A stretch of 64,000 nt of DNA from Lepidodermella squamata (GCA_047495785.1 JBLDXI010000007.1:4340001-4404000); one strand, 5' to 3'. Shown: positions 36,054 to 62,877, counted from the first letter of the stretch. Program-made: numbers and translations. Notes: generated by a model not told the origin, from the sequence alone.

Positions 36054-39000
36054 ATGGGCGCAAGATCCATTTTCTTGCTCTCCTCGTTATACTTTTTCAA
36101 CTATGTTGAAGCTCAGGGCATACAGCGCTGTGGAACGTTGGTTCCGCAGTTCTCGCTGTTCAACCACGTAGCAGACCGCGCTGCCAACTGGGAGTTGTAC
36201 CAAATGCCGGGTCTAAATGCAAGCAATTCGCCTGTGAACGCAACTCGCCTCTCCCTGAACACACTGTACAATACAAATGCTGGTATGTGGTCGAAAAGCG
36301 TAAGTGCTTTCAGCAACTGGGATATAGTACCTAGAGATTGAGTTCTCATGAATAGCCACTCACTCTGACCAACTTCTACATGGAGATTTGGGCGTATCTG
36401 TACTCAACCGTATCACCAGGCGCACACGGAATCATGGTGATAATCGGCAATAACGCCTCATTGACGCGGTTTAATTCAAGTAAGTAAAAGCAAATAAGCA
36501 CGCAGCAATTCTCAAAACTGTGCAGCATGGCGATTGGCGATCTTAGTGTGCGACTTTCAGGGGGTTGGGGGATAGACATCTTTCTGCCCCTTCGCCTTTG
36601 TCCCAGCTCGGCCAGACCAGATAACAAAATAAGCAAATATCCACTATTTCGTTAATCTTGAGAGGTTTTTAAGCGTGTTTTAGTGGCAAGTTTTCTTGTT
36701 TCGCTCGTTTTTTAGTCGAAACACCTTTAGGCAAAAACAGCAAAATCAACTTTTCCATCTCTAGCAGCTCCATGAACCAAGATCGCACCCTGGGCGATCT
36801 ATTCCTGTTGATCATGACTTACTTTTTAGGCTATTGGTATGGCGTAAACTGGTCCTCGTTCGTTGGACTCGGCGCTAATTTTTTCCCTTATATGTCGACC
36901 TATCTTGCGTGGCTAAGCACTGTTCCCTACGGTGCCAACAACGCACCTTACTATTGCTCGGTAAGCGACGTAATCGCGTGCAGCTCGAGCGTATCGCCGG
37001 CGACGTGGATGCTCAACCAACCTGTCATGTTCCAGGTTAGAGTTGAGGGCGGTTACAAAGTCTCGATTGCCTCTTGCCTGGTGAATGGCTCTTGTGTCGG
37101 ACCTTTCACTGGGTCGTCGAATCGCTACTCCTTGCTGAGCTCATTCCCCGGCGAGCAAATGATGCTCGGCATCAGTACACGGGCTGGCGGTGCTGCGGAT
37201 ACTGTAGACCTCCTGAGCGTAGGAGTTTACGACTGCTCCGCCGATCCATCGCCGAACAAGTAAGTTGCTGAACTCGGGATTCATTCGAATGTTCGACGAA
37301 TCTTCTTCTAGGATCCAATCGTGCGGGACGTTGGTGCCGCAGTGGTCTCTGATCAATCACACGGTCGATCGGGCCGCAAACTGGGACTATTACCCACATG
37401 CCAGTATGAGCTTGGTTGGCCAGCCAGCGAACACGACTCGACTGACCTCAGAAGGCTCAATCTACGCCGAAACTGGCCTGTGGAATCGTATCGTGAGTAG
37501 ATGATACCTAATTGTTTCTTGTGTTATTCGCCAATTTCCCACCACACTACAGCCTTTCAATTCGATTGATTTCTACATGGAATTGTCCGCTCGAGTTCTA
37601 GATACAGACAATTTGCTATCTGAAGGATTCGCTTTGATCATCGCCAACAACGCATCGATCGTCCGGCCACCTTTCACTCGTAATTTGAAGATGAAAAGTT
37701 ACCCATCACTATCAATTTTTAATAAGAAATTGGATTTGGCTTGGATTCTAATCAATATGTCGGATTCGCTTTGGCGATTAACGGCTATTTCTCTAAATTG
37801 AACGCCATGATAACAACAGCGCCTCGCAGCGGCATTCTTTTCCCAGCCAACTGTAATGCTACGGGCACCGCGATCTGTTTAACGCCTAGTTTCCCAATGA
37901 ATCGCAATCACATTGTTCAATACCAGATCCGGTTGATCAACGGAACATTTCTATCGGTAAAATTATCGATAATTATCGATATATTTTAATTTTGCTTTAT
38001 TTTAAAGATGTCTATGTGTCTGACTGACAATGTATGCGCTGGGCCGTTCACTGGGGCGTTACCATCGTCTCTTGTCAGTTTGATTGCATCTCAGTCGATG
38101 ATTTTAGGCGTAGCTGGTCGAAACGGAATCACGACTGACACAATTGATTTGCACAGCCTTGCAGTTTACGACTGCTCAGCATCGACAACTTCGAGCTCGA
38201 CTACAACCACTACCACGTCAACCACCACTACTAGCCCAACGACAACCACTACTACAACTACGAGCCCAAGCACCAGTACAACAACTACGACAAGCCCAAG
38301 CACAAGCTCAACCCAGAGCACCACAACGTCGACTGCCTCTGCCGCGACTTCGAACACGTGCCAGTGCTCGTGCCCAACTGTCGCTAGTTCATCGACTTTC
38401 AGCTCTACTACTGCGCCGCCTCTGCTCTCTGCTTCGTCGTCGTCGCCATGCACAGCTATGCTGTCGCAAGTCTCCAGCTCTCCAACTGCATTTTCAACGG
38501 TAGAGATGAGCATGAACTATTTTCGCTAAGAAATAGCGAATGAATGATGTCTGCTCTTCATGAAGGTCATATATGTCTACATTTATTTTACAGAGCCCCT
38601 CCACATCAACTACGGGATCAGCGACTTCCACGCAGGTAAGACCACGCCGGTTATTCCACCGTATGAGTTCTAGTTTTCGCTTAGACAGCCTCGCAATTTC
38701 TGACAAGCTCAGGACAATCAACATCGACCGCTGCTGCTTCTGTAAAAATTGTAAATATTAGCATTATCAACTTCACAAAACTGTGTATCAGGTGACTACT
38801 TCAATGCTGACAACCACGCGGACAGCTACTAGCTCATCTTCAACTTCATCTGTAAAATACTTGCTTTAAAGGGTTGTTTAGGAAGTACAGAAGAAAATGA
38901 GTTCTCTCAGACGTCTATGAAAGATAGAGCCAGAAAAAAAATGGGAGGAGGGAGGAAATTCCACGACTCTAAAACATTTACGGGCTCATTTTTGTTTCAG

Positions 39001-41029
39001 GCCACTCAGACAACCTCAGTTGCAGCTGGTAAACGAAAGAGAGCAATTTCTGTATCAAATGTTCAGATTCCTAGTTCAAAAACTGTTATTCAAGCCAAGC
39101 AGGGTGACCCAGGTAAAGCTTTTGGTCTTTCTAGCACATTATCAGGCCCGCCTACGTTACGGCTCTGCGCGCGCCCCTATTGGCCGGCCATTTCGCGCAC
39201 ACTGTTACGCAACACACGCGCGCCGTAAGTGCGTGCGTGCACAACTGAATCAATTTTAACCCAAAAAAGTCGCGCATTTCGCATATATTTTATCAGATTT
39301 ATAAAACATAATTTCAACCGAAAAAATCTTTATCTATCGATATAAAATGTGCATGGTAGGTACAAAAAATAAGCTAACGTGGCTAACTTTTGGACATACA
39401 CAACAAGGCACGCTCACTCGCCCAAGTCGTGCGCATTGTTATTTATCGCTAATTTTACCGCGCGCGCAGTTGTCAAAGAGAAACTTGAACCTTTTGTGGC
39501 GGTTTTTATGCCAAGATGAAGAGAATTTAATCCTCTATCGATTGAATATAGGGTTCTCGCTCGAAAAATTGAAAGGGAAAAAGTTTTACGTGCACTGAAA
39601 AATTAGGGCGGGTGACCTCACGCGAGCGCACCACCAAGTAAAAATTGTGCACGTCAAATGTTTAATTCCAAATTTCAATCGTAACGAATCTATATTCAAT
39701 CGATAGAGAATTCAATTTACTTCATTTTGATGTAAAAGCCGACGTGAAATTCATAGATTGCCCTTTGATTTCAGTTCAAAATGAGCTGACCAATAGGAGC
39801 GCGCGCAGAGCCATAACGTAGGCGGGCCTGAAAATGTGCGTCTTTCTACCTGAATCTGTCACAAAAATTCTGAATCAGATTCAGCTGCTGCCTTGGAAAT
39901 CGTCGCAAAATCGCAAAATTCAAGTTCCCAAATGATTCAAATGCTTCTTGGAAACCCTTCAAGCAAATACTACGACCTTCCAACATCTCCTTACACACTG
40001 GAAGACATTGTCAGCGGTTGCCCGGAATTATCTCCATCCCAAATTGTCCCGTTGCCTCAGGAACAAGCTCTCAATCAAGCGATGCTCATCACGCCAACAT
40101 TCGGCATCGACAAGTTGCTTGAAATTGACGCTGAAACTCAAAAGATATCCATTACGGGTTCGCTAATGTTGAGCTGGGCCGTTGATTCATGCCCAGCGGA
40201 AATTGATGACGTAAACGATCTTCAAGAATTAAAAATTGCGAACCGAAATTCGGTATGGAAGCCAGAGCTCAAGTTTATCGATACAGCTTCAGGCTGGAGT
40301 GAAGAATCACTGAAATCTGGCTTGATGGCTACAAGCCAAATCAAGGCTGAATCCATTAATTACACGCTACAATTTTATCAGATCTATTCAGGGAAGTTCA
40401 GTGGAACCTGCGTGAGTGATTTTGCTTATTACCCATTCGATCGACAAACTTGCGTCTTTGGATTTTCGCTGACTAAAGCCGTCACTACAGTTACATTTAA
40501 AGATCCGGCTTTTGTTGCTTCTGAGGTGAATCTGGGTGCAGGCTGGATCTACGAGGGCCGAATGACTGTGTTGACGATGGCTACACAAAGAGGCGTGAAA
40601 ACTAGCGCGGCCTTCTTTATTGTGACATTGAAACGTGATGGTTTGGGCCAATGGTCATCGCTGGTATCGCCAATTGGAGTTTTGGCTCTCGCCCTAGCTG
40701 CTTCTCTCTTTCTACCGCCCGGTTGCTTGCAACGCCCTGTGATTTCGGTCCTTGTTTTATTGGCTATGAGCGCAACAGGTTTCAACCTGTCCAAAGAATT
40801 GCCAGAACTTCAAAGCTATCAAAACTTCTACCTTGCACAATGCGCCAGTGGTCTGTTGTGGATTTGCGGAGCAACTGCATTGTTCCAACTGACTCTATGT
40901 TGCCACGAAAATGTATTAGCTTCGCCCAGCGCAAAGAGGGTTAGCCTAAGCCGTATATTCGACATGATTGTCGCTTTCCTTGTGGTCTCGTCGACTACGG
41001 CGCTGTTGCTTTATCAATTGCTTAGATGA
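36054..41029 (+). CDS. Tandem L-type lectin + mucin stalk + Cys-loop ligand-gated ion channel fusion, paralog 1 (~1083 aa, 12 exons)
   Basis: Exons 36054-36299, 36356-36479, 36830-37259, 37312-37492, 37553-37679, 37727-37956, 38008-38499, 38594-38635, 38685-38741, 38792-38851, 39001-39112, 39879-41029; all GT-AG, summing to 3252 nt in one open frame. Cys-loop CVSDFAYYPFDRQTC (C-x13-C), VWKPEL, and four TM segments. Confidence 0.8.
39134..39839. mobile_element. Mutator-type MITE in the last intron of the lectin-channel gene
   Basis: ~55-bp TIR GCACATTwTCAGGCCCGCCTACGTTA.GGCTCTGCGCGCGC... with a 9-bp TSD GTCTTTCTA. Confidence 0.85.
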
Positions 41030-41482: not shown

Positions 41483-42033
41483 ATGACACAGCTGCGATTT
41501 TGTTTGCGTTCGGTGATAGGTATAAATATGTTCAAGTTCAACGTTCAACATACTGTTAACAGTGCCTTTTCCGTCAGCTCTTCCGCTCATTCTGCTCATT
41601 TTCAAACCAGCATGGGGCCAGCAGGTTGATCGAATACAATTACTCACATTCTACATGTTTTACCGGTGTATTATTCATTAAGCCTGCACCTACACCGGCA
41701 GTGACTTCTACAACTACGCTGCCTCCTCTGCCCCCGCCACCACCACCACCTGCTCAAGACGTTGTTCGGCAAACGCAAGTGGTTCTCGTTCCCGTAGTTG
41801 TCGGCGGGGCCGCTGTTGCAGCTGGCAATAAAGGACAAACAAGTATTTATAGCCTTTATTCAATGAGGATGATTTCAATTCATTTTCCGCTCGTTTCAGC
41901 TGAACCGACTGAGCTGAGTCCGGAAGCAACAATAGGCATTGTCATCGGCGTGTTATCTTTTTGTTTAACTGTGGCCATCACAATTGTTAGCATTCTCAAC
42001 AGCTGCGGCATATCAACTGCTTGTAAATGCTGA
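41483..42033 (+). CDS. Family member G (Pro-rich ectodomain, TM, CGISTACKC stop)
   Basis: MTQLRFCLRSVIALPLILLIFKPAWGQQ|PAPTPAVTSTTTLPPLPPPPPPP...|EATIGIVIGVLSFCLTVAITIVSILNSCGISTACKC. Confidence 0.75.
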
Positions 42034-43074: not shown

Positions 43075-43538
43075 TAACGGGTAACAATAAAACCCCATGT
43101 TCAAAGCAATGAGAGCGCTGCTCTCAGTTGTGTCTGTTTTGCCGTGCTAATTAATCGCTGTGCATCAGGTGCATTCAACTTCGTACATATTGTTGATAAT
43201 CATTCGTTTTTTGCCCGCCGTAGCGTCGCAACGTCAATCGTTCATTGGGTTTTGTTAGTCTGTTGATCAATGCCAGGGGGTCCGATTTTCCTGGTCTTCA
43301 TATAAGTATAGAGTCTAGAGTTCAGTCGCTGTCAACGAGCAATCAATTCATCGCTTGGAAACGTAAGCGATCTGAAGGATTACTGCAATAATTGCTGACT
43401 GATGTCAACAACTTTCAAGCAGAGCTTCGGATTTGATTTAGTTTTATTTACGGCTTAATTTACGCACTTCCTTCCATCAATCATTTAAAAAGTCAATTCC
43501 TTCTGGAAATGTAAGAATCAAAAGGCCATACCTTTGTA

Positions 43539-46518
43539 CAGTGCTCCCTCGTTAGTGGCACCCTCCTTAAAAGAACTCCCTCGTTTGTAGACCGTAATTT
43601 TGGACCCTGCTAAATAAATTAGTAGTAAATTTTTAATTAAACACAAAATAATTATTTGATAAATTTAAAAAATTAAGCGTCAAAAATTAAAATAATAAAG
43701 CGTTCCTAGAAACCTAGCGGCGCGTTGTCGTGATTTTAGGCACTAAGCTGTTCTTGTGGCTTTGAAATGACTGTGATTATGCAACAGAGTGTGTGGATTA
43801 GCTGCCACTCAAATCGTGCTGCGAGTCGTCCTGCTTTTTTAGGTAAAACTCCATCAGAAATTCACCAGCTAGTTCATCAGAAACTAATTGGTAATTCGTT
43901 TCAACATCTATAAAAATGCCCTCCTATCTTCAATCTTCTTGATTTGCAGATTTTTCTGAGGTCAATAGCTGATCAATTAAACACCCATTGAGTTGCCCTG
44001 ATTTATCATGTTTTAGCAGTTTTCCTGACCAGAATAGCTTTTTTAATTTATCAACATGATCGAATTAGGATTAGAAATCGTGAATTTTGTCAGGAAAAAA
44101 TGAAACTTCGTGGTATTTTTTAAGAGTTAATCTAGTTTCGTCAGCTAATATTTGCGTTTTGTCAGCTAATTCCTGTTTTTGTCAGAAGTATCTTTTTCTG
44201 ACAGCAATGACTCTTTTTGACAGCAGAACTGCAATTTACCAGCTAGTTTAATGTTTATTGTAATTCAAACCATATTTCGCTAGCTAAGATCATATAAATG
44301 CGAATTACACATTTTTCTAACTATTTCAATATTCGGGTTGAAATGAATCCACGGCCAGTTTCAACGAATACTACGTGCGCACAGTCAGTCCAAAAAATCT
44401 GTTGAACCCGCATTTTTGGCACTTTCGACGCATCATAACAGCACAAATATGAATCGCTTGGGCTGCGAACTAGTCAGGGTTAGAGGGTTAGAAAAAGGCG
44501 GTATACAAGACTGTCAAGTTTTCATCCTGGGGGTGTCGATATGAGTTTGACGCAACGATAGAAGCGTGATAATTCCTTGTTATTCTGTAGAGTGATAGGT
44601 GTGGGGGTAGTAGAGAGGGAGTTCGGGTTCGATTTCACAAAAGTATATCATACATAGGTAGTTCGAGTAGTTACAGGCAATCAAGGTAAATTTTCGCTTT
44701 TTGCAATCATTTTCCTACTTTCTTTTTCTTGCGAAAAAATTAGCACTAATGTTAAAAGATGAAACTACGGTAATTACTACGGTAGGACTAAGGAAAAAAT
44801 CGGTTGACTTGGCGGCCGGACATTGCCGAAGCAGGGCGATTACGGCAATGACCTCTAATTGGCATTTTCCGCGATATTACCCAGTAGCGCGCAGTAGACG
44901 TTTAACATTTTAGATAATTTTAATTTTATTCAAAATTAGCTGATAAATAGTAGTTCTGCTGTTAAAAAGAGTCATTGCTGTCAGAAAACGATACTTCTGA
45001 CAAAAACAGGAATTAGCTGACGGAACAAGGAATTAGCTGACAAAACAATATACACCCTTTTTTAACGATTCGGTAGTTATTTCTCCATTATTGAAATAAC
45101 CCCGCTGGAATAAACCGTGAGCCGTGGGAAATGACTAGTAAAATCCAGGTTTTTCTGATCGAAATTCTTGAATTTTCCACACTAAATGATGAATTTTTTC
45201 CAGTTTTTTTCAAAATAATTTCCCAGCTGTGTTGCGTAATCAAGCGAAGAATCAAGTCCTTGTTTTCAGATTTAATTGAATTTAGATAAATAGAGTTATT
45301 CTCATAATAAACCGATTTAATCGTTCGAGTTGTGCTGAGTCATTGTAATTAGTAGCCGATTTTCGATAGTCTATAGGCCTGATCTACCATGAAACTGGCT
45401 GCCACTACTCTACGATTTCATTGCTCAACGCCTTGGCAATTTTACGGGTTTTTTTCACAACTTTTAATCATTCGATTTTGACTTTGAAAATCGCAACATC
45501 CCGAGGAGGGGCGGCGGGAGCTTCTGCCCGATTTTTTACCTTGATCTGATCTGAAGGCCAGTCGAATGAAAATCAGATCACGCCTGAGAAGATCCAAATT
45601 TATTCCATTCAAGCGAAACACCTATCGAACCGTTCCCTGTTGACGGAACCACACGTCTTATGCCTTGAAATTAGTCCGTAATTGCTCAATGCCATTAATG
45701 CGATGAATTTAAAACAGAAAAATTCAGGTTAACCGCGAAAGAATTATCGAAAATACATAATTCATCTTAATTTTTTCAAATTTCATATTAATTGGTCATT
45801 TTTTAAATAATTCTAGGAATTTTAGGCGAAGCATGACTTCTGAGAATGTTAGGCTGAATTTGCTGGTGATTTATTCAGAAGTATTCTGGTCAATCTTGAC
45901 CAAGGTGATTGATTTTTTAAGCTGTGATTTCAAATGAAATTGTTTGCGAAATCGGACGATCTGGGCATTTTGAAGTAAATTGAAATAATGAGCAGGGTGC
46001 GAAGTACAGGGGTGCTGGGGTGTCGCGACACCCCAGCTTCGGGATTCCAAACAGAGGAAGGCTGAAAATACCACAGGGAGGACCCTTTGGTTTCTTCGGC
46101 TTCGTGCTGGAAACTTGCCAGAAAACACCTCAGCTCCCGGATCCTACATCGCACACTGATAATGAGATTCCAGGTTTTGTTATTATTCTGAGTTCCGTAA
46201 CCCCAGGCAGGACTTAAAATCAGAGTAAAGAAACAAGGCCAGCCAGCCAAATCAAAGCCGCCCGGGCAACTCAGAAAAAAACTTTGCGACGAACTTATGA
46301 TTCATAGTGTTATTGTTTCACAGCCTTCAGCGAGCGAAATTTGTGATGACACGTAATCCGTGTCCGTCTCTTTCTGCGCGTTGGCATGGCAACTGTCTTA
46401 AGACGTAGAAACGGTCTATTTTTAGCTTCTGCATTCAATTACAGCCCTCGTTATAGCTTTCCCTTGTTTAAAGACCGGGTCTGGCTCCCGACCCAGTGCT
46501 TTTATCGAGGGAGCACTG
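43539..46518. mobile_element. 2980-bp non-autonomous Tc1/mariner-type element, copy 1
   Basis: TA|CAGTGCTCCCTCG...CGAGGGAGCACTG|TA with no transposase ORF. Contains a nested inverted-repeat element (~44135-45046) and a small MITE (~45993-46158) also seen at ~16366-16460. Confidence 0.85.
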
Positions 46519-46609
46519 TATTCATTTCGGTTTATTTATTGTTAAAATAGCAACTTTCCGAATTCAAAATGATAACCAAGATTGCTTGTTATTTTTGGTT
46601 GTGGGCAGC

Positions 46610-46892
46610 TCACGATCACGATCACGATTACGAATCCACGATTTCTCCTCGCCCGGACGGACACGAGCTTTCGCCATAAAAGGCGGAACTAGTTGGATAA
46701 TCGCGAGTTTACGCTCTAGGAAAGTTTGGTCTGGTTTACCCACTACTTAATGAGTACCCATGTACTCTATACCCCTGTTACTCCAGTCCTTGCTGACTGT
46801 TTCTCCAGGGACCAGGCATTGGTACCTAGGTGGTTACCCAATCAGCGAAGCCTACTAACGCCGTCGTAGCAAGAAAGCTACCAAAAGACTCC
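46610..46892 (-). mobile_element. SINE-like repeat with (CGTGAT)n tail (also at 54780-55062)
   Basis: Homologous to 22991-23176, with a tandem hexamer tail. Confidence 0.55.
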
Positions 46893-47718
46893 TAGTTTGA
46901 GAATGATTTACAAGAGGTAATTACACGGAGCCAAGATATAGAATTTCCCACTGGGAAAATCCGGCAATGCCTCTGCAACACCCCCTCTCAGACATTTCCA
47001 TTTGTCTTTATTTGGAACACATTGATTTACGAAATTATATATATATGCGCATGGTTTCAACTGCCATAAGACCTTTTTCTACAGGAGTTGCAACGCGGCT
47101 AATACGACCAATTTACCTGTGCACTTAGAGGAACCACGCAAAAGCACCCACCACTTAGCGACCGCGTGAAACTTTGAGTTGCATTCGAAAAGCCATTGAC
47201 TGCCCTTGACGTCAAAATCAATTTTAATGGCTTGTCCAATATGAGATGCACTTAGAGCATAATGCGAGCGCTCGAGCGATACCCAACTCAAACTCGCTTT
47301 GAATTATTCAACCAGCCTACCACGCTTTGCCGCTAAGAATTAGACAATTCTTCAGGCCACAAGTATACTTGAAGAGAAATATTTGTTGTAAAATTATGAT
47401 TGCTAAATTGAGATATACCTCGGCGTTGCTTTACAGGCGTTGCTTTACATGACCCCGAACCCCGAACCTACGCAACCAATTGACGTTTCGCCCTGCACTC
47501 TGGAGCTATTCGACGGAATCTGCAACTTGTATCACACAACATTCGGTGTACTCGAGCGAAATTCGAATAAAGACATAAAAGTTGTCATTAGCTTGCTTCC
47601 ACGTATAATCATCGACCACTTAACGCTTTCAAGCGAATGAATAATTCATTGTCTAACGCGCATTGCAATCGCATTGGAAAACATTTGAGGTGACAATTCA
47701 GGTCTGTGTGAAAACACC

Positions 47719-50700
47719 ATGTCGCAGTTTGCTTGTGCTGTTTTCTCGCTAAGCATTTTGAGTCTCGCTGATGCTCAAGGTGTGTCTCGCTGTGGGACTC
47801 TGCTTCCGCAGTTCTCGCTGTTCAACCACGCCGATGCCGACCGATCGGTTAACTGGGAGTTGTACCAAATGCCGGGTTTGAATGCAAGCATCTCGCCGGT
47901 GAATGCAACTCGCCTCTCGCTGAACAACCTCCAAAATTCGAACGGCGCCATTTGGGCGAGGAAAGTTAGTAATTGCGCTGATTTCTTAGCTTGTCTGAGC
48001 TGTATTTTCTCTTGCAAAGCCTTTCACACTGACCAACTTCTACATCGAAGCATGGGCTTACGTCAGCTCAAACTCTCCGGGCGGTTCAGGCGATGGTACC
48101 CTGTTTCTTATTGGTGACAATGCGTCTATCTCTCGGTTCAATTCTAGTAAGTACAGCGGTAGAGCTAAGAGACTGCCGACTGCGATAATTTCTATGGGTA
48201 TTTTATTTCTGGTTGGGCTTAATTAATTACGATTTGTTATTTGCTAATCCGACTAAATTCAGAACAGAAACGCAAGTGTAACGCCTGTTAAATTTCTTAT
48301 TTCTGCCACCAGGCTACCATTTCGGCGTAGACTGGACCTCTTTCACTGGCATGGGCGTCCATTTTTTCCCCTATCACGAGTCCTATTCATCATGGATAAG
48401 CACGGTGACTTATGGCGAAAACAACCAGCCGTACTACTGTTGGGCACGGGACACAATCTTGTGCACCAGCGTTAATGCAACAGCCTGGCTGATCAACAAG
48501 CCTGTCATGTACCAAATTCGAGTCGAAAATGGCAACAAAGTGACAATGGGGTCTTGCCGGTCAGATGGCGCATGCATCGGACCTTTCACTGGCTCGTCTA
48601 GTGCTTACTCGCTCGCTAACTCCTTCGCAGGCAAGCAACTGATGCTTGGCATCGGCGTGCGATCCGGCTGGAATACTGACACCGTCGACCTCCTAAGTGT
48701 AGCTGTCTACGACTGCTCGATTGCGGCATCGCCGAACAAGTAATTTATAAACGTGACGTTAACCATTAATTGCACATTCGATGAAGGGTTGAATCGTGTG
48801 GAACTTTGATGCCACAGTTTTCGCTGCTCAACCACGCGGTTGATCGAGCAGCCAACTGGGACAACTACCCACACTCGGGTATGAGCCTGGCTGGCCAGCC
48901 GGCAAACACAACGCGTCTGGCTTCCGAAGGCTCGAAAAACGCCGAATCAGGCTTATGGAACCGAAACGTAAGCGGATACTTGTTTCAAGTGACCACTTCA
49001 CAATGTTCCTTGCTGAAAGTGCGATAATAGTACATTTCCTATTAACCATTAATCATTAATCATTGCTAACACCAAGATTCGGAACCTGAGAAACAACCGC
49101 GTTGGAAGATGAATTATTCACTTAATCAATTCAAACTTAGCTTTCTTTTCGTAGCCTTTCAGCAAGTCGAGCTTCTACATCGAGCTATCGGTTAGTGTTA
49201 CCGACCTGGACAACGCACCATCGCCAGGAATCGCCCTCCTTATTGCTAGTAACCAATCGATCGGGCGACCATCAAATCTGCGTAATTTTCCCGACCTACT
49301 CTAAAACTTGCATCATCGCTTTAAATTGCAGAAAATGGCTTCGGCCTGGATTCAAGCAAATTCGTGGGTTTTTCGGTCGCATCCAACTTTTTATCGGGTT
49401 ATCTTAGTTCGAAAATTACGCCAACTTCTCCAGGGGGCTCTCTGTTCCCTGGCATTTGCAGTACCGCGGATAGCACAGTCTGCGCAGCTCTCAATTCAAC
49501 AACAAAAAACAATACGGTTCAATACCAGATTCGGCTCGACAATGGAGTGTCACTGTCGGTAATAATTTCGTTCTTTCGCAATATCGTTGTCACTATGAAA
49601 GCCTTTAACAGATTTCGGCTTGTTTGTTTGATGGCACGTGTTTCGGACCTTATACAGGAACTTTGCCGACTTCTCTAGCGAATTTGATGGCCGCTCAAGC
49701 TATGATGCTGGGCTTGGGAACCACAAGTGGAAACACATCAGACACAATCGATGTGATCAGCATTGCAGTCTACGATTGCACACAAACAACTACAAGCAGT
49801 CCCACGTCTACGATCGCAACCGATTCTTCGAAAGTTTCAACGTCAACTTCAAAGCCGTTGAAAACTACGACAGATCAGAGTTCCACTGAAGAAAATGACT
49901 TTGCGACCAATTCAGATAGCGAATTCCCGATTCCTGAGCTAGAGCGAGGCAATCACATGCCCACAGTCGATATCGAGGATCTGCTGCCTTGTAAAACCCT
50001 CGCCGCAGACTTGAGATCGCCTGATCCGAATACAAAAGTCTACGCAACGCTAACAGTTGAGAGACTAGCATCCGTTGATCAAAATGAGCAGCAAGTATCA
50101 CTGTGGGGCGGTCTGCTCCTCCAGTGGATGGTCAGCTCGTGCGGGGCTAATTATACAGCTCCAGAAGCTGATGACAAGGAACGGCTAGTTTCGACACGCC
50201 GAACTGATCTATGGCGACCTTCGTTGGTTTTCGCTAACAAAACACCTGATTTCGACCTCAGCAACCCGGCTTGCGGTGAGTCGATGGATATTGCCTATTA
50301 CCCAACTGCACCAAACCGCACTCTGTTCTTCCACTGGAACCGCGTTGGAACTTTCCCGGCCAGTTGCGAAATTGACTTGTCCAAGTTCCCTTTCGACACG
50401 CAAACCTGTGAGATGACAATGCTGATGTTCGAATCTGCTTATTTCATTCGAATTGGTGGAATGAATGTCTTGCTCATGGGCGACCTAACATACGGAGTTT
50501 GGGCTTTCGATTCGCTGAAGGTCCTGAAGGGAAATGTCACTAGTCCAATCAGACAATCTGACCAAGTTTCATTTGCCAAAGTGAAATTCACATTCAAGCG
50601 TAGCCCTGGTTACTACATCGTGAATATGGTTGTGCCTTGCTACGTTCTGATAATTCTCGCCTTTGCAACTTTCTTCATGGATCCAGCTGTTCCTGATCGG

Positions 50701-51021
50701 CCTGCAATTTGCTGCACGATCATGTTGTCTCTCATCGTTGCCCAGTCAGATGTACTCTCGAGCGTGCCAGCGACAAATCAGGAGATTCTTTATGCAAATT
50801 ACATCCTCGGCCTTACTGCAACAATCGCTTGCATTGCCTTCTATCAAATCGTGATGTCTCGTCTCGTTTCCAAAAATGAAGCCAAGTATGAGACGCCTGT
50901 CAAAATCGTCGGTGGATTTACGTCAACTCTTGTCAATCTGCTTGACATCCTAGCTGGCATGGCGGCATTCGAAGGCGTTCTCGCTATAAACCTCTACTTT
51001 GTGATGTTTATTGTCCTGTGA
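47719..51021 (+). CDS. Tandem L-type lectin + stalk + Cys-loop ligand-gated ion channel fusion, paralog 2 copy a (~914 aa, 7 exons)
   Basis: Exons 47719-47964, 48020-48146, 48313-48739, 48787-48967, 49155-49281, 49332-49558, 49612-51021 (2745 nt, open). The last exon alone holds the end of lectin domain 2, the stalk and the whole channel (LWRPSL, CEIDLSKFPFDTQTC, FKRSPGYYIVNMVVP, four TM). Confidence 0.88.
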
Positions 51022-51708
51022 CGCCGAGTTCTTCATGATATTTAGAATCAGTAAGAACACGTTATCCGCCGTTGAAAACGTGTTGCAATTAAGAATGTGC
51101 GACAGCTGTCTATAAATTGGTAGTTCTTCGCCTTGGCCACCTTTTGTGTATTGAAATTACAAGAATCACTTCGGATCATGATTTATCTTGTGAGGCATGT
51201 AGACAACAAAAAAGAAATTCTCCTTCTCAGTGATTGTAGCAAAATCGTGAATAAAAATCGGCACAAACCTGCTCATTCCTACTCATTTCTAAACTCCCAG
51301 TCATTGTGCAAACTTTGTTTTTTTGCAGAAAGCAGCTAATTTTTTAGGCTTTTTCGAAAAGTAAATTGGTGGAGCCTGTAACCGTTTTGCATGTGATTTT
51401 TCAGCTGAGTCTGTTTCGAGTTGGACAATTTAAAAAATGTCAGAAATCAGGAATGAGGAGTAGGAGTGAATTTTATAATAATTGTTCTATGAATCCTCAA
51501 TTCCTCCGCAGCTAAATGCATTATTTGATGTAGTAAATCTGACTGCCATTGTTATGTCACGTTTTAGCACAAACGCATCTTGAGAGACCTGCATTTGGTC
51601 ATCGCAACCAATTGCACACCCTGGGCGACAAATAGAAAACATTCGAGCTCAAGCACCTCGGGAGCAGATGAGATGCGGAAATAGGCGCATTAAGGCTTTC
51701 ATTAACTA

Positions 51709-54688
51709 CAGTGCTCCCTCGTTAGTGGCACCCTCCTTAAAAGAACTCCCTCGTTTGTAGACCGTAATTTTGGACCCTGCTAAATAAATTAGTAGTAAAT
51801 TTTTAATTAAACACAAAATAATTATTTGATAAATTTAAAAAATTAAGCGTCAAAAATTAAAATAATAAAGCGTTCCTAGAAACCTAGCGGCGCGTTGTCG
51901 TGATTTTAGGCACTAAGCTGTTCTTGTGGCTTTGAAATGACTGTGATTATGCAACAGAGTGTGTGGATTAGCTGCCACTCAAATCGTGCTGCGAGTCGTC
52001 CTGCTTTTTTAGGTAAAACTCCATCAGAAATTCACCAGCTAGTTCATCAGAAACTAATTGGTAATTCGTTTCAACATCTATAAAAATGCCCTCCTATCTT
52101 CAATCTTCTTGATTTGCAGATTTTTCTGAGGTCAATAGCTGATCAATTAAACACCCATTGAGTTGCCCTGATTTATCATGTTTTAGCAGTTTTCCTGACC
52201 AGAATAGCTTTTTTAATTTATCAACATGATCGAATTAGGATTAGAAATCGTGAATTTTGTCAGGAAAAAATGAAACTTCGTGGTATTTTTTAAGAGTTAA
52301 TCTAGTTTCGTCAGCTAATATTTGCGTTTTGTCAGCTAATTCCTGTTTTTGTCAGAAGTATCTTTTTCTGACAGCAATGACTCTTTTTGACAGCAGAACT
52401 GCAATTTACCAGCTAGTTTAATGTTTATTGTAATTCAAACCATATTTCGCTAGCTAAGATCATATAAATGCGAATTACACATTTTTCTAACTATTTCAAT
52501 ATTCGGGTTGAAATGAATCCACGGCCAGTTTCAACGAATACTACGTGCGCACAGTCAGTCCAAAAAATCTGTTGAACCCGCATTTTTGGCACTTTCGACG
52601 CATCATAACAGCACAAATATGAATCGCTTGGGCTGCGAACTAGTCAGGGTTAGAGGGTTAGAAAAAGGCGGTATACAAGACTGTCAAGTTTTCATCCTGG
52701 GGGTGTCGATATGAGTTTGACGCAACGATAGAAGCGTGATAATTCCTTGTTATTCTGTAGAGTGATAGGTGTGGGGGTAGTAGAGAGGGAGTTCGGGTTC
52801 GATTTCACAAAAGTATATCATACATAGGTAGTTCGAGTAGTTACAGGCAATCAAGGTAAATTTTCGCTTTTTGCAATCATTTTCCTACTTTCTTTTTCTT
52901 GCGAAAAAATTAGCACTAATGTTAAAAGATGAAACTACGGTAATTACTACGGTAGGACTAAGGAAAAAATCGGTTGACTTGGCGGCCGGACATTGCCGAA
53001 GCAGGGCGATTACGGCAATGACCTCTAATTGGCATTTTCCGCGATATTACCCAGTAGCGCGCAGTAGACGTTTAACATTTTAGATAATTTTAATTTTATT
53101 CAAAATTAGCTGATAAATAGTAGTTCTGCTGTTAAAAAGAGTCATTGCTGTCAGAAAACGATACTTCTGACAAAAACAGGAATTAGCTGACGGAACAAGG
53201 AATTAGCTGACAAAACAATATACACCCTTTTTTAACGATTCGGTAGTTATTTCTCCATTATTGAAATAACCCCGCTGGAATAAACCGTGAGCCGTGGGAA
53301 ATGACTAGTAAAATCCAGGTTTTTCTGATCGAAATTCTTGAATTTTCCACACTAAATGATGAATTTTTTCCAGTTTTTTTCAAAATAATTTCCCAGCTGT
53401 GTTGCGTAATCAAGCGAAGAATCAAGTCCTTGTTTTCAGATTTAATTGAATTTAGATAAATAGAGTTATTCTCATAATAAACCGATTTAATCGTTCGAGT
53501 TGTGCTGAGTCATTGTAATTAGTAGCCGATTTTCGATAGTCTATAGGCCTGATCTACCATGAAACTGGCTGCCACTACTCTACGATTTCATTGCTCAACG
53601 CCTTGGCAATTTTACGGGTTTTTTTCACAACTTTTAATCATTCGATTTTGACTTTGAAAATCGCAACATCCCGAGGAGGGGCGGCGGGAGCTTCTGCCCG
53701 ATTTTTTACCTTGATCTGATCTGAAGGCCAGTCGAATGAAAATCAGATCACGCCTGAGAAGATCCAAATTTATTCCATTCAAGCGAAACACCTATCGAAC
53801 CGTTCCCTGTTGACGGAACCACACGTCTTATGCCTTGAAATTAGTCCGTAATTGCTCAATGCCATTAATGCGATGAATTTAAAACAGAAAAATTCAGGTT
53901 AACCGCGAAAGAATTATCGAAAATACATAATTCATCTTAATTTTTTCAAATTTCATATTAATTGGTCATTTTTTAAATAATTCTAGGAATTTTAGGCGAA
54001 GCATGACTTCTGAGAATGTTAGGCTGAATTTGCTGGTGATTTATTCAGAAGTATTCTGGTCAATCTTGACCAAGGTGATTGATTTTTTAAGCTGTGATTT
54101 CAAATGAAATTGTTTGCGAAATCGGACGATCTGGGCATTTTGAAGTAAATTGAAATAATGAGCAGGGTGCGAAGTACAGGGGTGCTGGGGTGTCGCGACA
54201 CCCCAGCTTCGGGATTCCAAACAGAGGAAGGCTGAAAATACCACAGGGAGGACCCTTTGGTTTCTTCGGCTTCGTGCTGGAAACTTGCCAGAAAACACCT
54301 CAGCTCCCGGATCCTACATCGCACACTGATAATGAGATTCCAGGTTTTGTTATTATTCTGAGTTCCGTAACCCCAGGCAGGACTTAAAATCAGAGTAAAG
54401 AAACAAGGCCAGCCAGCCAAATCAAAGCCGCCCGGGCAACTCAGAAAAAAACTTTGCGACGAACTTATGATTCATAGTGTTATTGTTTCACAGCCTTCAG
54501 CGAGCGAAATTTGTGATGACACGTAATCCGTGTCCGTCTCTTTCTGCGCGTTGGCATGGCAACTGTCTTAAGACGTAGAAACGGTCTATTTTTAGCTTCT
54601 GCATTCAATTACAGCCCTCGTTATAGCTTTCCCTTGTTTAAAGACCGGGTCTGGCTCCCGACCCAGTGCTTTTATCGAGGGAGCACTG
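51709..54688. mobile_element. Tc1/mariner-type element, copy 2 (hybrid flanks)
   Basis: Same sequence as copy 1. Left flank as in copy 3, right flank as in copy 1. Confidence 0.85.
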
Positions 54689-55888
54689 TATTCATTTCGG
54701 TTTATTTATTGTTAAAATAGCAACTTTCCGAATTCAAAATGATAACCAAGATTGCTTGTTATTTTTGGTTGTGGGCAGCTCACGATCACGATCACGATTA
54801 CGAATCCACGATTTCTCCTCGCCCGGACGGACACGAGCTTTCGCCATAAAAGGCGGAACTAGTTGGATAATCGCGAGTTTACGCTCTAGGAAAGTTTGGT
54901 CTGGTTTACCCACTACTTAATGAGTACCCATGTACTCTATACCCCTGTTACTCCAGTCCTTGCTGACTGTTTCTCCAGGGACCAGGCATTGGTACCTAGG
55001 TGGTTACCCAATCAGCGAAGCCTACTAACGCCGTCGTAGCAAGAAAGCTACCAAAAGACTCCTAGTTTGAGAATGATTTACAAGAGGTAATTACACGGAG
55101 CCAAGATATAGAATTTCCCACTGGGAAAATCCGGCAATGCCTCTGCAACACCCCCTCTCAGACATTTCCATTTGTCTTTATTTGGAACACATTGATTTAC
55201 GAAATTATATATATATGCGCATGGTTTCAACTGCCATAAGACCTTTTTCTACAGGAGTTGCAACGCGGCTAATACGACCAATTTACCTGTGCACTTAGAG
55301 GAACCACGCAAAAGCACCCACCACTTAGCGACCGCGTGAAACTTTGAGTTGCATTCGAAAAGCCATTGACTGCCCTTGACGTCAAAATCAATTTTAATGG
55401 CTTGTCCAATATGAGATGCACTTAGAGCATAATGCGAGCGCTCGAGCGATACCCAACTCAAACTCGCTTTGAATTATTCAACCAGCCTACCACGCTTTGC
55501 CGCTAAGAATTAGACAATTCTTCAGGCCACAAGTATACTTGAAGAGAAATATTTGTTGTAAAATTATGATTGCTAAATTGAGATATACCTCGGCGTTGCT
55601 TTACAGGCGTTGCTTTACATGACCCCGAACCCCGAACCTACGCAACCAATTGACGTTTCGCCCTGCACTCTGGAGCTATTCGACGGAATCTGCAACTTGT
55701 ATCACACAACATTCGGTGTACTCGAGCGAAATTCGAATAAAGACATAAAAGTTGTCATTAGCTTGCTTCCACGTATAATCATCGACCACTTAACGCTTTC
55801 AAGCGAATGAATAATTCATTGTCTAACGCGCATTGCAATCGCATTGGAAAACATTTGAGGTGACAATTCAGGTCTGTGTGAAAACACC

Positions 55889-58800
55889 ATGTCGCAGTTT
55901 GCTTGTGCTGTTTTCTCGCTAAGCATTTTGAGTCTCGCTGATGCTCAAGGTGTGTCTCGCTGTGGGACTCTGCTTCCGCAGTTCTCGCTGTTCAACCACG
56001 CCGATGCCGACCGATCGGTTAACTGGGAGTTGTACCAAATGCCGGGTTTGAATGCAAGCATCTCGCCGGTGAATGCAACTCGCCTCTCGCTGAACAACCT
56101 CCAAAATTCGAACGGCGCCATTTGGGCGAGGAAAGTTAGTAATTGCGCTGATTTCTTAGCTTGTCTGAGCTGTATTTTCTCTTGCAAAGCCTTTCACACT
56201 GACCAACTTCTACATCGAAGCATGGGCTTACGTCAGCTCAAACTCTCCGGGCGGTTCAGGCGATGGTACCCTGTTTCTTATTGGTGACAATGCGTCTATC
56301 TCTCGGTTCAATTCTAGTAAGTACAGCGGTAGAGCTAAGAGACTGCCGACTGCGATAATTTCTATGGGTATTTTATTTCTGGTTGGGCTTAATTAATTAC
56401 GATTTGTTATTTGCTAATCCGACTAAATTCAGAACAGAAACGCAAGTGTAACGCCTGTTAAATTTCTTATTTCTGCCACCAGGCTACCATTTCGGCGTAG
56501 ACTGGACCTCTTTCACTGGCATGGGCGTCCATTTTTTCCCCTATCACGAGTCCTATTCATCATGGATAAGCACGGTGACTTATGGCGAAAACAACCAGCC
56601 GTACTACTGTTGGGCACGGGACACAATCTTGTGCACCAGCGTTAATGCAACAGCCTGGCTGATCAACAAGCCTGTCATGTACCAAATTCGAGTCGAAAAT
56701 GGCAACAAAGTGACAATGGGGTCTTGCCGGTCAGATGGCGCATGCATCGGACCTTTCACTGGCTCGTCTAGTGCTTACTCGCTCGCTAACTCCTTCGCAG
56801 GCAAGCAACTGATGCTTGGCATCGGCGTGCGATCCGGCTGGAATACTGACACCGTCGACCTCCTAAGTGTAGCTGTCTACGACTGCTCGATTGCGGCATC
56901 GCCGAACAAGTAATTTATAAACGTGACGTTAACCATTAATTGCACATTCGATGAAGGGTTGAATCGTGTGGAACTTTGATGCCACAGTTTTCGCTGCTCA
57001 ACCACGCGGTTGATCGAGCAGCCAACTGGGACAACTACCCACACTCGGGTATGAGCCTGGCTGGCCAGCCGGCAAACACAACGCGTCTGGCTTCCGAAGG
57101 CTCGAAAAACGCCGAATCAGGCTTATGGAACCGAAACGTAAGCGGATACTTGTTTCAAGTGACCACTTCACAATGTTCCTTGCTGAAAGTGCGATAATAG
57201 TACATTTCCTATTAACCATTAATCATTAATCATTGCTAACACCAAGATTCGGAACCTGAGAAACAACCGCGTTGGAAGATGAATTATTCACTTAATCAAT
57301 TCAAACTTAGCTTTCTTTTCGTAGCCTTTCAGCAAGTCGAGCTTCTACATCGAGCTATCGGTTAGTGTTACCGACCTGGACAACGCACCATCGCCAGGAA
57401 TCGCCCTCCTTATTGCTAGTAACCAATCGATCGGGCGACCATCAAATCTGCGTAATTTTCCCGACCTACTCTAAAACTTGCATCATCGCTTTAAATTGCA
57501 GAAAATGGCTTCGGCCTGGATTCAAGCAAATTCGTGGGTTTTTCGGTCGCATCCAACTTTTTATCGGGTTATCTTAGTTCGAAAATTACGCCAACTTCTC
57601 CAGGGGGCTCTCTGTTCCCTGGCATTTGCAGTACCGCGGATAGCACAGTCTGCGCAGCTCTCAATTCAACAACAAAAAACAATACGGTTCAATACCAGAT
57701 TCGGCTCGACAATGGAGTGTCACTGTCGGTAATAATTTCGTTCTTTCGCAATATCGTTGTCACTATGAAAGCCTTTAACAGATTTCGGCTTGTTTGTTTG
57801 ATGGCACGTGTTTCGGACCTTATACAGGAACTTTGCCGACTTCTCTAGCGAATTTGATGGCCGCTCAAGCTATGATGCTGGGCTTGGGAACCACAAGTGG
57901 AAACACATCAGACACAATCGATGTGATCAGCATTGCAGTCTACGATTGCACACAAACAACTACAAGCAGTCCCACGTCTACGATCGCAACCGATTCTTCG
58001 AAAGTTTCAACGTCAACTTCAAAGCCGTTGAAAACTACGACAGATCAGAGTTCCACTGAAGAAAATGACTTTGCGACCAATTCAGATAGCGAATTCCCGA
58101 TTCCTGAGCTAGAGCGAGGCAATCACATGCCCACAGTCGATATCGAGGATCTGCTGCCTTGTAAAACCCTCGCCGCAGACTTGAGATCGCCTGATCCGAA
58201 TACAAAAGTCTACGCAACGCTAACAGTTGAGAGACTAGCATCCGTTGATCAAAATGAGCAGCAAGTATCACTGTGGGGCGGTCTGCTCCTCCAGTGGATG
58301 GTCAGCTCGTGCGGGGCTAATTATACAGCTCCAGAAGCTGATGACAAGGAACGGCTAGTTTCGACACGCCGAACTGATCTATGGCGACCTTCGTTGGTTT
58401 TCGCTAACAAAACACCTGATTTCGACCTCAGCAACCCGGCTTGCGGTGAGTCGATGGATATTGCCTATTACCCAACTGCACCAAACCGCACTCTGTTCTT
58501 CCACTGGAACCGCGTTGGAACTTTCCCGGCCAGTTGCGAAATTGACTTGTCCAAGTTCCCTTTCGACACGCAAACCTGTGAGATGACAATGCTGATGTTC
58601 GAATCTGCTTATTTCATTCGAATTGGTGGAATGAATGTCTTGCTCATGGGCGACCTAACATACGGAGTTTGGGCTTTCGATTCGCTGAAGGTCCTGAAGG
58701 GAAATGTCACTAGTCCAATCAGACAATCTGACCAAGTTTCATTTGCCAAAGTGAAATTCACATTCAAGCGTAGCCCTGGTTACTACATCGTGAATATGGT

Positions 58801-59191
58801 TGTGCCTTGCTACGTTCTGATAATTCTCGCCTTTGCAACTTTCTTCATGGATCCAGCTGTTCCTGATCGGCCTGCAATTTGCTGCACGATCATGTTGTCT
58901 CTCATCGTTGCCCAGTCAGATGTACTCTCGAGCGTGCCAGCGACAAATCAGGAGATTCTTTATGCAAATTACATCCTCGGCCTTACTGCAACAATCGCTT
59001 GCATTGCCTTCTATCAAATCGTGATGTCTCGTCTCGTTTCCAAAAATGAAGCCAAGTATGAGACGCCTGTCAAAATCGTCGGTGGATTTACGTCAACTCT
59101 TGTCAATCTGCTTGACATCCTAGCTGGCATGGCGGCATTCGAAGGCGTTCTCGCTATAAACCTCTACTTTGTGATGTTTATTGTCCTGTGA
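55889..59191 (+). CDS. Lectin-Cys-loop channel fusion, paralog 2 copy b (identical to copy a)
   Basis: Identical translated ORFs at +8170. Confidence 0.85.
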
Positions 59192-59878
59192 CGCCGAGTT
59201 CTTCATGATATTTAGAATCAGTAAGAACACGTTATCCGCCGTTGAAAACGTGTTGCAATTAAGAATGTGCGACAGCTGTCTATAAATTGGTAGTTCTTCG
59301 CCTTGGCCACCTTTTGTGTATTGAAATTACAAGAATCACTTCGGATCATGATTTATCTTGTGAGGCATGTAGACAACAAAAAAGAAATTCTCCTTCTCAG
59401 TGATTGTAGCAAAATCGTGAATAAAAATCGGCACAAACCTGCTCATTCCTACTCATTTCTAAACTCCCAGTCATTGTGCAAACTTTGTTTTTTTGCAGAA
59501 AGCAGCTAATTTTTTAGGCTTTTTCGAAAAGTAAATTGGTGGAGCCTGTAACCGTTTTGCATGTGATTTTTCAGCTGAGTCTGTTTCGAGTTGGACAATT
59601 TAAAAAATGTCAGAAATCAGGAATGAGGAGTAGGAGTGAATTTTATAATAATTGTTCTATGAATCCTCAATTCCTCCGCAGCTAAATGCATTATTTGATG
59701 TAGTAAATCTGACTGCCATTGTTATGTCACGTTTTAGCACAAACGCATCTTGAGAGACCTGCATTTGGTCATCGCAACCAATTGCACACCCTGGGCGACA
59801 AATAGAAAACATTCGAGCTCAAGCACCTCGGGAGCAGATGAGATGCGGAAATAGGCGCATTAAGGCTTTCATTAACTA

Positions 59879-62858: not shown

Positions 62859-62877
62859 TATTTACCACACTGTGGAT

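What the first reader, a model, noticed from the sequence alone, without database searches (positions are those of the whole stretch)
47719..51021. Candidate glycan-sensing ion channel: two L-type lectin domains fused N-terminally to a complete Cys-loop receptor subunit
Seen: the spliced ORF reads signal peptide, domain 1, domain 2, S/T stalk, pLGIC extracellular domain (C-x13-C with FPFD), then M1-M4. The fusion does not depend on splicing guesses, because the end of domain 2 (MMLGLGTTSGNTSDTIDVISIAVYDC), the stalk and the channel share one exon (49612-51021). Knowledge: the repeated domain follows the L-type lectin pattern of ERGIC-53/VIP36, i.e. RL...G-x-W...P...F-x-x-E...GDG...FG...F-x-G-x-x-V...G...G...D-x-x-D-x-x-S. 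Ordinary animal Cys-loop subunits start the ligand-binding domain right after the signal peptide. I do not know a described animal pLGIC with tandem legume-like lectin domains. Inference: a pentamer would display up to 10 lectin domains, which could gate or localise the channel on contact with glycans (microbes, prey, symbionts, substrate, matrix). A diverged paralog with the same architecture (36054-41029) argues for a selected family.
Basis: partly seen in the sequence, partly recalled or inferred. Interest (0 to 1): 0.95.

Follow-up and report, generated by a model that had tools for sequence, protein, structure and literature searches.

The report
Lectin-like heads on a Cys-loop channel
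This eukaryotic gene encodes a complete neurotransmitter-receptor-type (Cys-loop) ion channel subunit whose outer end carries two legume-lectin-like domains on a flexible sugar-coated stalk, a build I found in no paper and no named database entry, though whether the heads bind sugars or open the channel is untested.

Summary
Seven GT-AG exons (47719-51021) join in frame into a 914-aa protein. It reads signal peptide, two ~235-aa repeats (40% identical, E 2e-54), a ~70-aa disordered Ser/Thr stalk, then a complete Cys-loop channel subunit. The fusion needs no splicing guess, because the end of repeat 2, the stalk and the channel share exon 7.

The channel is solid: Pfam Neur_chan_LBD 1.1e-10, an AlphaFold model with pLDDT mostly above 90, and Foldseek E ~1e-18 to ELIC, GlyR and nAChR.

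The sugar/calcium motif "GDG" is present in only one of four domain copies, so glycan binding is doubtful.

Unnamed relatives from metagenome contigs show the same plan. The scan had already noted this family on other pieces of this genome. An exact second copy lies at 55889-59191. I rate it a new variant of a known kind, with function untested.

The parts
47719..51021 (+). Whole gene A: 7 exons at 47719-47964, 48020-48146, 48313-48739, 48787-48967, 49155-49281, 49332-49558 and 49612-51021; 914 aa
   Evidence: All borders are GT..AG and the joined frame is open. An RNA-run contig joins 49281 to 49332.
47719..47781 (+). Signal peptide, residues 1-21
   Evidence: Hydrophobic N-terminus ending ...LADAQG, read from the sequence. 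No predictor was run.
47791..48716 (+). L-type-lectin-like domain 1, residues 25-259, spliced over exons 1-3. It has six Cys, the first and last at the domain ends.
48797..49779 (+). L-type-lectin-like domain 2, residues 271-501, spliced over exons 4-7. It lacks the GDG aspartate.
   Evidence: Alignment of the four domain copies and blastp against domain 1.
49780..50001 (+). Ser/Thr-rich stalk, residues 502-~575; 44% S+T over residues 502-560
   Evidence: Composition. pLDDT is under 50 across exon-7 residues 31-101 of the AF2 model.
50002..50604 (+). pLGIC extracellular domain, with the Cys-loop C697-C711 at 50365-50409
   Evidence: Pfam Neur_chan_LBD 1.1e-10, 41.8 bits against a cutoff of 26. 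PDB sequence hits to nAChR and GlyR at ~1e-12. AF2 pLDDT mostly above 90.
50605..51018 (+). Transmembrane domain M1-M4. M2 lies at 50695-50766 with Asp at -1', Arg at 0' and Leu at 9'. The M3-M4 link is only 18 aa.
   Evidence: AF2 helices at exon-7 residues 333-355, 362-384, 393-421 and 440-468. Foldseek TM 0.78-0.83 by target to ELIC, sTeLIC and GlyR. R363 and L372 are invariant in the family alignment.
55889..59191 (+). Second, letter-identical copy of gene A
   Evidence: Tandem unit of 8170 bp. 43537-54692 equals 51707-62862 exactly, 11,156 bp.
36054..41029 (+). Diverged paralog B with the same two domains (63% and 56% aa identity to gene A's), a long Ser/Thr stalk and its channel on a separate exon
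   Evidence: Gene model of the N-terminal part, dN/dS and Pfam on the channel exon.

Best explanation
Gene A encodes a secreted-pathway, single-chain subunit of a pentameric Cys-loop channel. From the N-terminus it has:
- two cysteine-rich beta-sandwich domains of the L-type (legume-like) lectin kind;
- a ~70-residue disordered Ser/Thr-rich stalk, probably O-glycosylated;
- a compact channel module: an extracellular domain with the Cys-loop, then M1-M4 with almost no intracellular domain.

The pore has a leucine at 9' and an acidic residue at -1'. From established knowledge of this superfamily, that points to cation selectivity.

Inferred, not shown: five subunits would hold up to ten heads well above the ligand-binding ring. 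Because the stalk is long and flexible, the heads most likely capture or anchor to an extracellular macromolecule (glycan or protein, on matrix, mucus, a microbe or a neighbouring cell). That would localise, cluster or tether the channel, rather than drive the gate through a rigid interface as proposed for the bacterial channel DeCLIC.

The gene belongs to an expanded family under purifying selection in this genome and in unnamed relatives.
For: Shown here:
- Clean seven-exon model, with the fusion inside exon 7.
- An RNA-run contig carries the exon 5-6 joint. RNA cover lies over exons 1 and 3-7, with none in intron 4 or the flanks.
- Channel identity.
- Stalk predicted disordered.
- Lectin-like identity: Atlas features 0.95 with 170 shared features, and all ten best hits in L-type families.
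- VIA-align against 48,161 chains puts the E. histolytica legume-lectin-like domain, ERGIC-53, FRIL, p58 and VIP36 at ranks 1-5. Thrombospondin C-terminal, an archaeal legume lectin, peanut lectin and Emp47p all sit within the top 14. Each is aligned to the C-terminal part of its domain, as expected for exon 3.
- Relatives with the same plan in single open frames: P0151 (812 aa) has two N-terminal domains, a stalk and a channel, and its domain 2 also lands on Lectin_legB (0.91).
- An HMM of the four window domains matches the N-terminal domains of P0013 and P0008 at E 2e-5 and 0.0095.
- P0035 has a significant Laminin_G_3 match plus Neur_chan_LBD.
- Constraint: for domain 1 of gene A against the paralog, dN 0.25 against dS 1.44.
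Against: - No profile or sequence search recognises the N-terminal domain.
- The GDG aspartate is absent from 3 of 4 copies.
- RNA evidence is thin. Contigs are short, 28 of the 66 laid are only 90-95% alike, exon 2 has no cover, and the RNA run carries a different organism label from the DNA run.
- No transcript is shown to span the lectin and channel parts upstream of exon 7.
- Pentamer formation, ion flow and any ligand are untested.
Confidence: 0.6

Rival explanations
1. The heads are lectin-fold adhesion or spacer modules that bind no sugar, as with the L-type-lectin-like C-terminal domain of thrombospondins. A conventional small agonist at the subunit interfaces gates the channel. The heads serve only placement, assembly or protection.
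For: The GDG aspartate is missing in 3 of 4 copies, and the loop that carries the calcium/sugar residues in L-type lectins is replaced. Thrombospondin C-terminal domains are among the best structural matches. The stalk is disordered. The extracellular domain keeps the family's conserved core.
Against: Loop C of the channel shows no aromatic residues typical of amine sites, by my reading of the sequence. Head types vary across the family (L-type-like, LamG-like, EGF-containing), which suggests the heads are the variable recognition part.
Confidence: 0.3
2. The full-length fusion is rarely or never made. Transcripts start within or just before exon 7 and give a plain channel, and the upstream exons are a separate secreted lectin-like product or a relic.
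For: No read-level evidence ties exons 1-6 to exon 7. Exon 2 had no RNA cover.
Against: Exon 7 itself begins in the middle of domain 2, has a proper acceptor and has no signal peptide of its own. The channel needs an N-terminal signal to place its extracellular domain outside. RNA depth runs on from exon 6 into exon 7. Relatives carry head, stalk and channel in one open frame. The domains are under constraint.
Confidence: 0.07
3. The locus is an assembly artefact or a dead copy.
For: Two copies are identical over 11,156 bp, which could be an assembly duplication.
Against: The frame is open over 914 codons with seven correct intron borders. A DNA run holds 97% of the sampled words and covers the stretch evenly. 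An artificial duplication would not affect the gene itself.
Confidence: 0.03

Closest known systems
Animal Cys-loop receptors (nAChR, GlyR, GABA-A, 5-HT3)
   Same: Extracellular domain with C-x13-C and FPFD; pre-M1 Arg; M1 Pro; M2 with Leu at 9'; four helices. PDB sequence hits at ~1e-12 and Foldseek E ~1e-18.
   Different: About 550 extra residues precede the ligand-binding domain. The M3-M4 link is only 18 aa, not a large intracellular domain. A family-specific extra cysteine pair is present (C572 and C622). The best database relative is only 35% identical.
DeCLIC and other bacterial pLGICs with an N-terminal domain (PMC12664993)
   Same: Two beta-sandwich lobes precede the canonical extracellular domain. 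The channel is compact, without an intracellular domain.
   Different: DeCLIC is prokaryotic and its lobes are described as four-plus-four-stranded jelly rolls that form calcium sites facing the vestibule (PMC12664993). Here the protein is eukaryotic and has the Cys-loop. Its heads are ~235-aa L-type-lectin-like domains on a ~70-aa disordered stalk. Homology between the two kinds of head was not tested.
L-type lectins: ERGIC-53, VIP36, Emp46/47, legume lectins, bacterial L-type domains
   Same: They are the nearest families by Atlas features and the best structural matches of the partial model. The size is similar (~230 aa), and the conserved first and last cysteines would staple the N- and C-terminal strands.
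   Different: There is no Pfam or NCBIfam match. The GDG aspartate is kept in only 1 of 4 copies, and the calcium/sugar loop is not recognisable. The domain is fused to an ion channel, not to a cargo-receptor tail.
Ionotropic glutamate receptors and adhesion GPCRs (concept only)
   Same: A large extracellular recognition module is stacked on a signalling core. Some adhesion GPCRs use LamG/pentraxin domains (PMC13729602).
   Different: The channel and receptor folds are unrelated. This is an analogy only.

Membership tests
Pentameric ligand-gated ion channel (Cys-loop) superfamily | Extracellular ligand-binding domain matching Neur_chan_LBD | tested here: met
   41.8 bits against a cutoff of 26, E 1.1e-10. 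PDB hits to nAChR and GlyR at ~1e-12.
Pentameric ligand-gated ion channel (Cys-loop) superfamily | Cys-loop: two Cys 13 residues apart, with the F/Y-P-F/x-D core | tested here: met
   C697 and C711 with FPFD between them, read from the sequence. Both Cys and the Pro are invariant in 60 relatives.
Pentameric ligand-gated ion channel (Cys-loop) superfamily | Four transmembrane helices with a pore-lining M2 carrying Leu at 9' | tested here: met
   AF2 gives four helices at pLDDT above 90. Foldseek TM is up to 0.83 by target. Pfam Neur_chan_memb alone is below its cutoff (11.8 bits against 28.1).
Pentameric ligand-gated ion channel (Cys-loop) superfamily | Assembles as a pentamer and conducts ions on ligand binding | not testable with these tools
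   Needs expression and electrophysiology.
L-type (legume-like) lectin domain | Match to the family profiles (PF00139, PF03388, PF18483) | tested here: inconclusive
   No hit at E up to 1 or up to 10. Only exon pieces of this gene could be scanned. Complete domains of relatives (P0151) also gave no hit.
L-type (legume-like) lectin domain | ConA-like two-sheet beta sandwich closest to solved L-type lectins | tested here: inconclusive
L-type (legume-like) lectin domain | Conserved Asp/Asn calcium and sugar ligands (the Asp of the A/G-D-G motif; the Asn/Asp loop after the F-x-G-hydrophobic strand) | tested here: not met
   By motif position only, with no structural alignment. GDG occurs in domain 1 of gene A alone. 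Where the acidic loop is expected, the four copies read FFPYHESY, SNFLSGYL, FFPYMSTY and INGYFSKL.
L-type (legume-like) lectin domain | Binds carbohydrate | not testable with these tools
   Needs a glycan array or binding assay.
DeCLIC-type pLGIC with N-terminal domain | Two N-terminal beta-sandwich lobes before the extracellular domain | tested here: met
   Architecture only.
DeCLIC-type pLGIC with N-terminal domain | Lobes lie beside the vestibule, close to the extracellular domain | tested here: not met
   The heads are separated from the extracellular domain by ~70 residues predicted disordered. DeCLIC features are as described in PMC12664993.

The most novel reading that the evidence does not exclude
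The heads are the true sensors. Binding of a glycan-bearing or other macromolecular surface by up to ten lectin-like heads, or the pull it exerts through the mucin-like stalks, opens a cation channel directly. That would make a contact- or glycan-gated Cys-loop receptor family. A variant is gating by release of the heads from the channel's own stalk glycans.
Probability: 0.15. Interest if true: 0.9.

Novelty: new variant of a known kind. Interest (0 to 1): 0.72.

Why it matters
Current pLGIC papers treat extra N-terminal domains as a prokaryotic feature, with DeCLIC the only one studied structurally (PMC12664993). This gene shows that eukaryotic Cys-loop channels can also carry large extracellular recognition modules. 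In the broader family the heads vary: L-type-lectin-like, LamG-like or EGF-containing, usually on mucin-like stalks.

If the heads take part in gating, fast ionotropic signalling would extend from small transmitters to macromolecular or surface cues. If they only place the channel, they are still a new way of anchoring a pLGIC.

The channel module is compact, without introns and without an intracellular domain. That makes it a convenient object for expression and cryo-EM.

Tried and rejected
Searches that found nothing:
- Pfam on each lectin exon piece, and on the N-terminal parts of P0151, P0008 and P0013.
- NCBIfam on the same.
- phmmer and a 9-row profile against PDB sequences.
- Word-indexed protein search with exon 3 and with exon 7. 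The length window and low identity limit this tool.
- JGI metagenome scan with exon 3.
- Atlas features on the 58-aa mature part of exon 1: too short, best score 0.62.

Weak or uninformative results:
- Foldseek of the partial model against PDB and Swiss-Prot models was not significant. FRIL was at rank 2 with E 0.48.
- The ESM Atlas shape search gave only generic ConA-like and beta-sandwich rows.
- Local hhalign of the four-copy alignment against single N-terminal domains of relatives was insensitive: 20% probability for P0013 and 4% or less for the rest. A plain HMM search did link P0013 and P0008.

Steps not done:
- The spliced domain or whole protein has no reference and was not typed in, so HHpred-like and full-domain folding steps were left out.
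- The organism was not identified. Run and organism names are coded, and the relatives are unnamed ENA metagenome proteins.

Rejected reading: two neighbouring genes wrongly joined. Exon 7 is one open frame from the middle of domain 2 to M4.

Full report
**Observation**

The stretch 47600-51100 was translated in three frames and read base by base. Seven exons with GT..AG borders join in frame into 915 codons including the stop, giving 914 aa. The exons are 47719-47964, 48020-48146, 48313-48739, 48787-48967, 49155-49281, 49332-49558 and 49612-51021.

The protein layout is:
- a hydrophobic signal peptide (residues 1-21);
- two repeats (25-259 and 271-501) that are 40% identical over 239 residues, E 2e-54;
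- a stretch rich in Ser and Thr (502-~575; 44% S+T over residues 502-560);
- a channel module.

The last ~56 residues of repeat 2, the stalk and the whole channel lie in one open frame, 49609-51018, behind an AG acceptor. So the fusion does not depend on a splice prediction. This part of the finding is confirmed at the stated coordinates.

**The channel**

Several results agree.
- Pfam Neur_chan_LBD scores 41.8 bits against a cutoff of 26, E 1.1e-10. Neur_chan_memb is below its cutoff.
- Sequence search of solved structures gives 222 chains at E up to 0.001, led by nicotinic and glycine receptor subunits at about 1e-12.
- An AlphaFold2 model of exon 7, using a 60-row alignment of relatives (A2), has mean pLDDT 83. 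The channel part is mostly above 90. It shows a short N-terminal helix, ten strands, and four helices at exon-7 residues 333-355, 362-384, 393-421 and 440-468. Only 18 residues link M3 and M4.
- Foldseek matches ELIC, sTeLIC, glycine, GABA-A and nicotinic receptors at E about 1e-18, with TM up to 0.83 by target.
- Invariant across the 60 relatives are both Cys-loop cysteines, the loop proline, the pre-M1 arginine, the M1 proline, the 0' arginine and the 9' leucine. A further cysteine pair is nearly invariant.

M2 starts with Asp at -1' and Arg at 0'. From what is established for this superfamily, that suggests cation selectivity. This is inference.

The subunit is therefore complete. It is compact like bacterial family members, but it has the eukaryotic Cys-loop.

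**The N-terminal repeats**

Sequence methods do not recognise them.
- Pfam on every exon piece found nothing.
- Pfam on the N-terminal parts of relatives found nothing.
- NCBIfam found nothing.
- phmmer and a small profile against PDB sequences found nothing.

Two other lines point the same way.

First, ESM Atlas features. For the 141 residues of exon 3, the C-terminal 60% of domain 1, the nearest clusters are Lectin_legB / Lectin_L-type_dom at 0.95 with 170 shared features. All ten best family-bearing hits belong to L-type lectin families. By the tool's own figures, shuffled proteins reach 0.95 about once in 100.

Second, structure. An AlphaFold2 model of that same piece was built with a nine-row alignment (A1). 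It is all-beta at modest confidence: pLDDT 64, pTM 0.56. Foldseek found nothing significant.

The exhaustive VIA-align pass over 48,161 chains ranks these first:

Thrombospondin C-terminal domains, an archaeal legume lectin domain, peanut lectin and Emp47p all sit within the top 14. Every later row is another ConA-like sandwich. In each case the aligned range is the C-terminal part of the target domain, as expected for exon 3.

The full domain could not be tested.

**Is it a lectin in the functional sense?**

The four domain copies in the window were aligned. Six cysteines per domain are conserved, the first and last at the domain ends. That fits a staple between the N- and C-terminal strands of such a sandwich, which is inference.

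After the conserved F-x-G strand, where L-type lectins carry their acidic calcium and sugar loop (my knowledge of ERGIC-53 and legume lectins), the copies read FFPYHESY, SNFLSGYL, FFPYMSTY and INGYFSKL.

By motif position, then, the canonical site is not kept. Sugar binding is possible but not indicated. I put it near one in three.

**Stalk**

Exon-7 residues 31-101 have pLDDT under 50 and the stretch is rich in Ser, Thr and Pro. A long flexible, probably O-glycosylated link makes rigid head-to-gate coupling unlikely. It favours tethering, placement or pulling.

**Expression**

Two runs hold the stretch. One, of unrecorded kind, holds 97% of the sampled words and covers introns and flanks evenly, so it behaves as DNA. 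The other is probably RNA, dates from 2015, holds 12% of the words and carries a different coded organism label.

In the RNA run:
- cover lies over exon 1 and exons 3-7;
- cover is nil in intron 4 and both flanks;
- one contig joins 49281 to 49332 with GT..AG ends, exactly intron 5 of the model.

Caveats:
- the contigs are about 100 bases long;
- 28 of the 66 laid are only 90-95% alike, so they may come from paralogs or a related strain;
- exon 2 had no cover;
- nothing ties exon 1 to exon 7 in one molecule.

**Family**

The exhaustive HMMER search with exon 7 found 2970 proteins at E up to 0.001, but the best is only 35% identical. The twenty looked up, among them thirteen of the fifteen best hits, come only from ENA metagenome assemblies and carry no name.

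Many of the closest carry N-terminal extensions of 130-580 residues and a Ser/Thr stalk.
- P0151 (812 aa, same cluster as the best hit) has two N-terminal domains, a short Thr stalk and the channel in one open frame. Its second domain also lands on Lectin_legB by Atlas features (0.91).
- An HMM of the four window domains matches the N-terminal domains of P0013/P0154/P0155 (E 2e-5 to 8e-5) and of P0008 (E 0.0095).
- The contig of P0154 shows a further upstream exon of that domain.
- P0029 and P0055 (914 and 916 aa) are long head-plus-stalk-plus-channel proteins. P0029 and P0018 show weak Laminin_G_3 matches.
- P0035 has a significant Laminin_G_3 match (6.4e-16) before Neur_chan_LBD.
- P0012 has an EGF-like match.
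- P0029 lies in a single open frame next to a tandem trypsin array.

The general plan, a variable recognition head on a mucin-like stalk on a compact Cys-loop channel, is thus shared by several unnamed eukaryotic genomes.

Within the window:
- Paralog B has the same exon phases and the same two domains, at 63% and 56% identity to gene A's. For domain 1, dN is 0.25 against dS 1.44; dS is saturated for domain 2.
- An exact second copy of gene A lies 8170 bp downstream. 43537-54692 equals 51707-62862, 11,156 bp without a difference.
- Earlier first-stage notes of this scan list the same kind of gene on at least eight other pieces of this genome. I did not test those.

**Literature**

In the held library:
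- no paper holds both 'Cys-loop' and 'L-type lectin';
- none holds the two Pfam names together;
- searches combining pLGIC terms with lectin, laminin G or ConA-like terms returned nothing relevant.

The 2016 inventory of pLGICs (PMC4795631) does not mention N-terminal domains or lectins in its main text. [quoted passage not shown] Subscription-only papers and database architecture tables were not searchable here.

**Verdict**

The architecture is real, selected and apparently undescribed, and the heads are most likely L-type-lectin-like in fold. Sugar sensing and gating by the heads are open, and the sequence gives reasons for doubt.

I class it as a new variant of a known kind: a Cys-loop channel with a new extracellular architecture.

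Noticed in passing
window 43537-62862: Tandem repeat of an 8170-bp unit, about 2.4 copies, with no difference over 11,156 bp. It is either a very recent duplication or an assembly duplication. The unit holds about 4.2 kb of upstream DNA with no long open frame, plus gene A.
   Followed up: partly
window 1212-3164 (+), 10030-11373 (-), 21176-22189 (+): Intron-free open frames: an ankyrin-repeat protein (651 aa), a flavin monooxygenase-like protein (447 aa) and a MULE/ZSWIM-type transposase fragment.
   Followed up: partly
window 41626-42033 (+): A 135-aa open frame with a Thr/Pro-rich stretch and a C-terminal hydrophobic segment, just downstream of paralog B. It could be a small mucin-like membrane protein or chance.
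   Followed up: no
L001 1-5437: Next to the head-plus-stalk-plus-channel gene P0029, the metagenome contig carries a tandem array of six trypsin-domain genes on the other strand.
   Followed up: no
proteins P0024, P0122: Predicted proteins with three or four Neur_chan_LBD stretches but a single transmembrane region. They are either tandem extracellular domains or merged gene calls.
   Followed up: no
window 48020-48146 (exon 2): No cover in the RNA run while neighbouring exons are covered at 2-6x. This is probably low depth. Skipping this 127-nt exon would shift the frame.
   Followed up: no
exon-7 residues 127 and 177 (protein C572, C622; window ~49990 and ~50140): A cysteine pair at the top of the extracellular domain is nearly invariant in the 60 relatives. 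It is a family-specific second disulfide candidate.
   Followed up: partly
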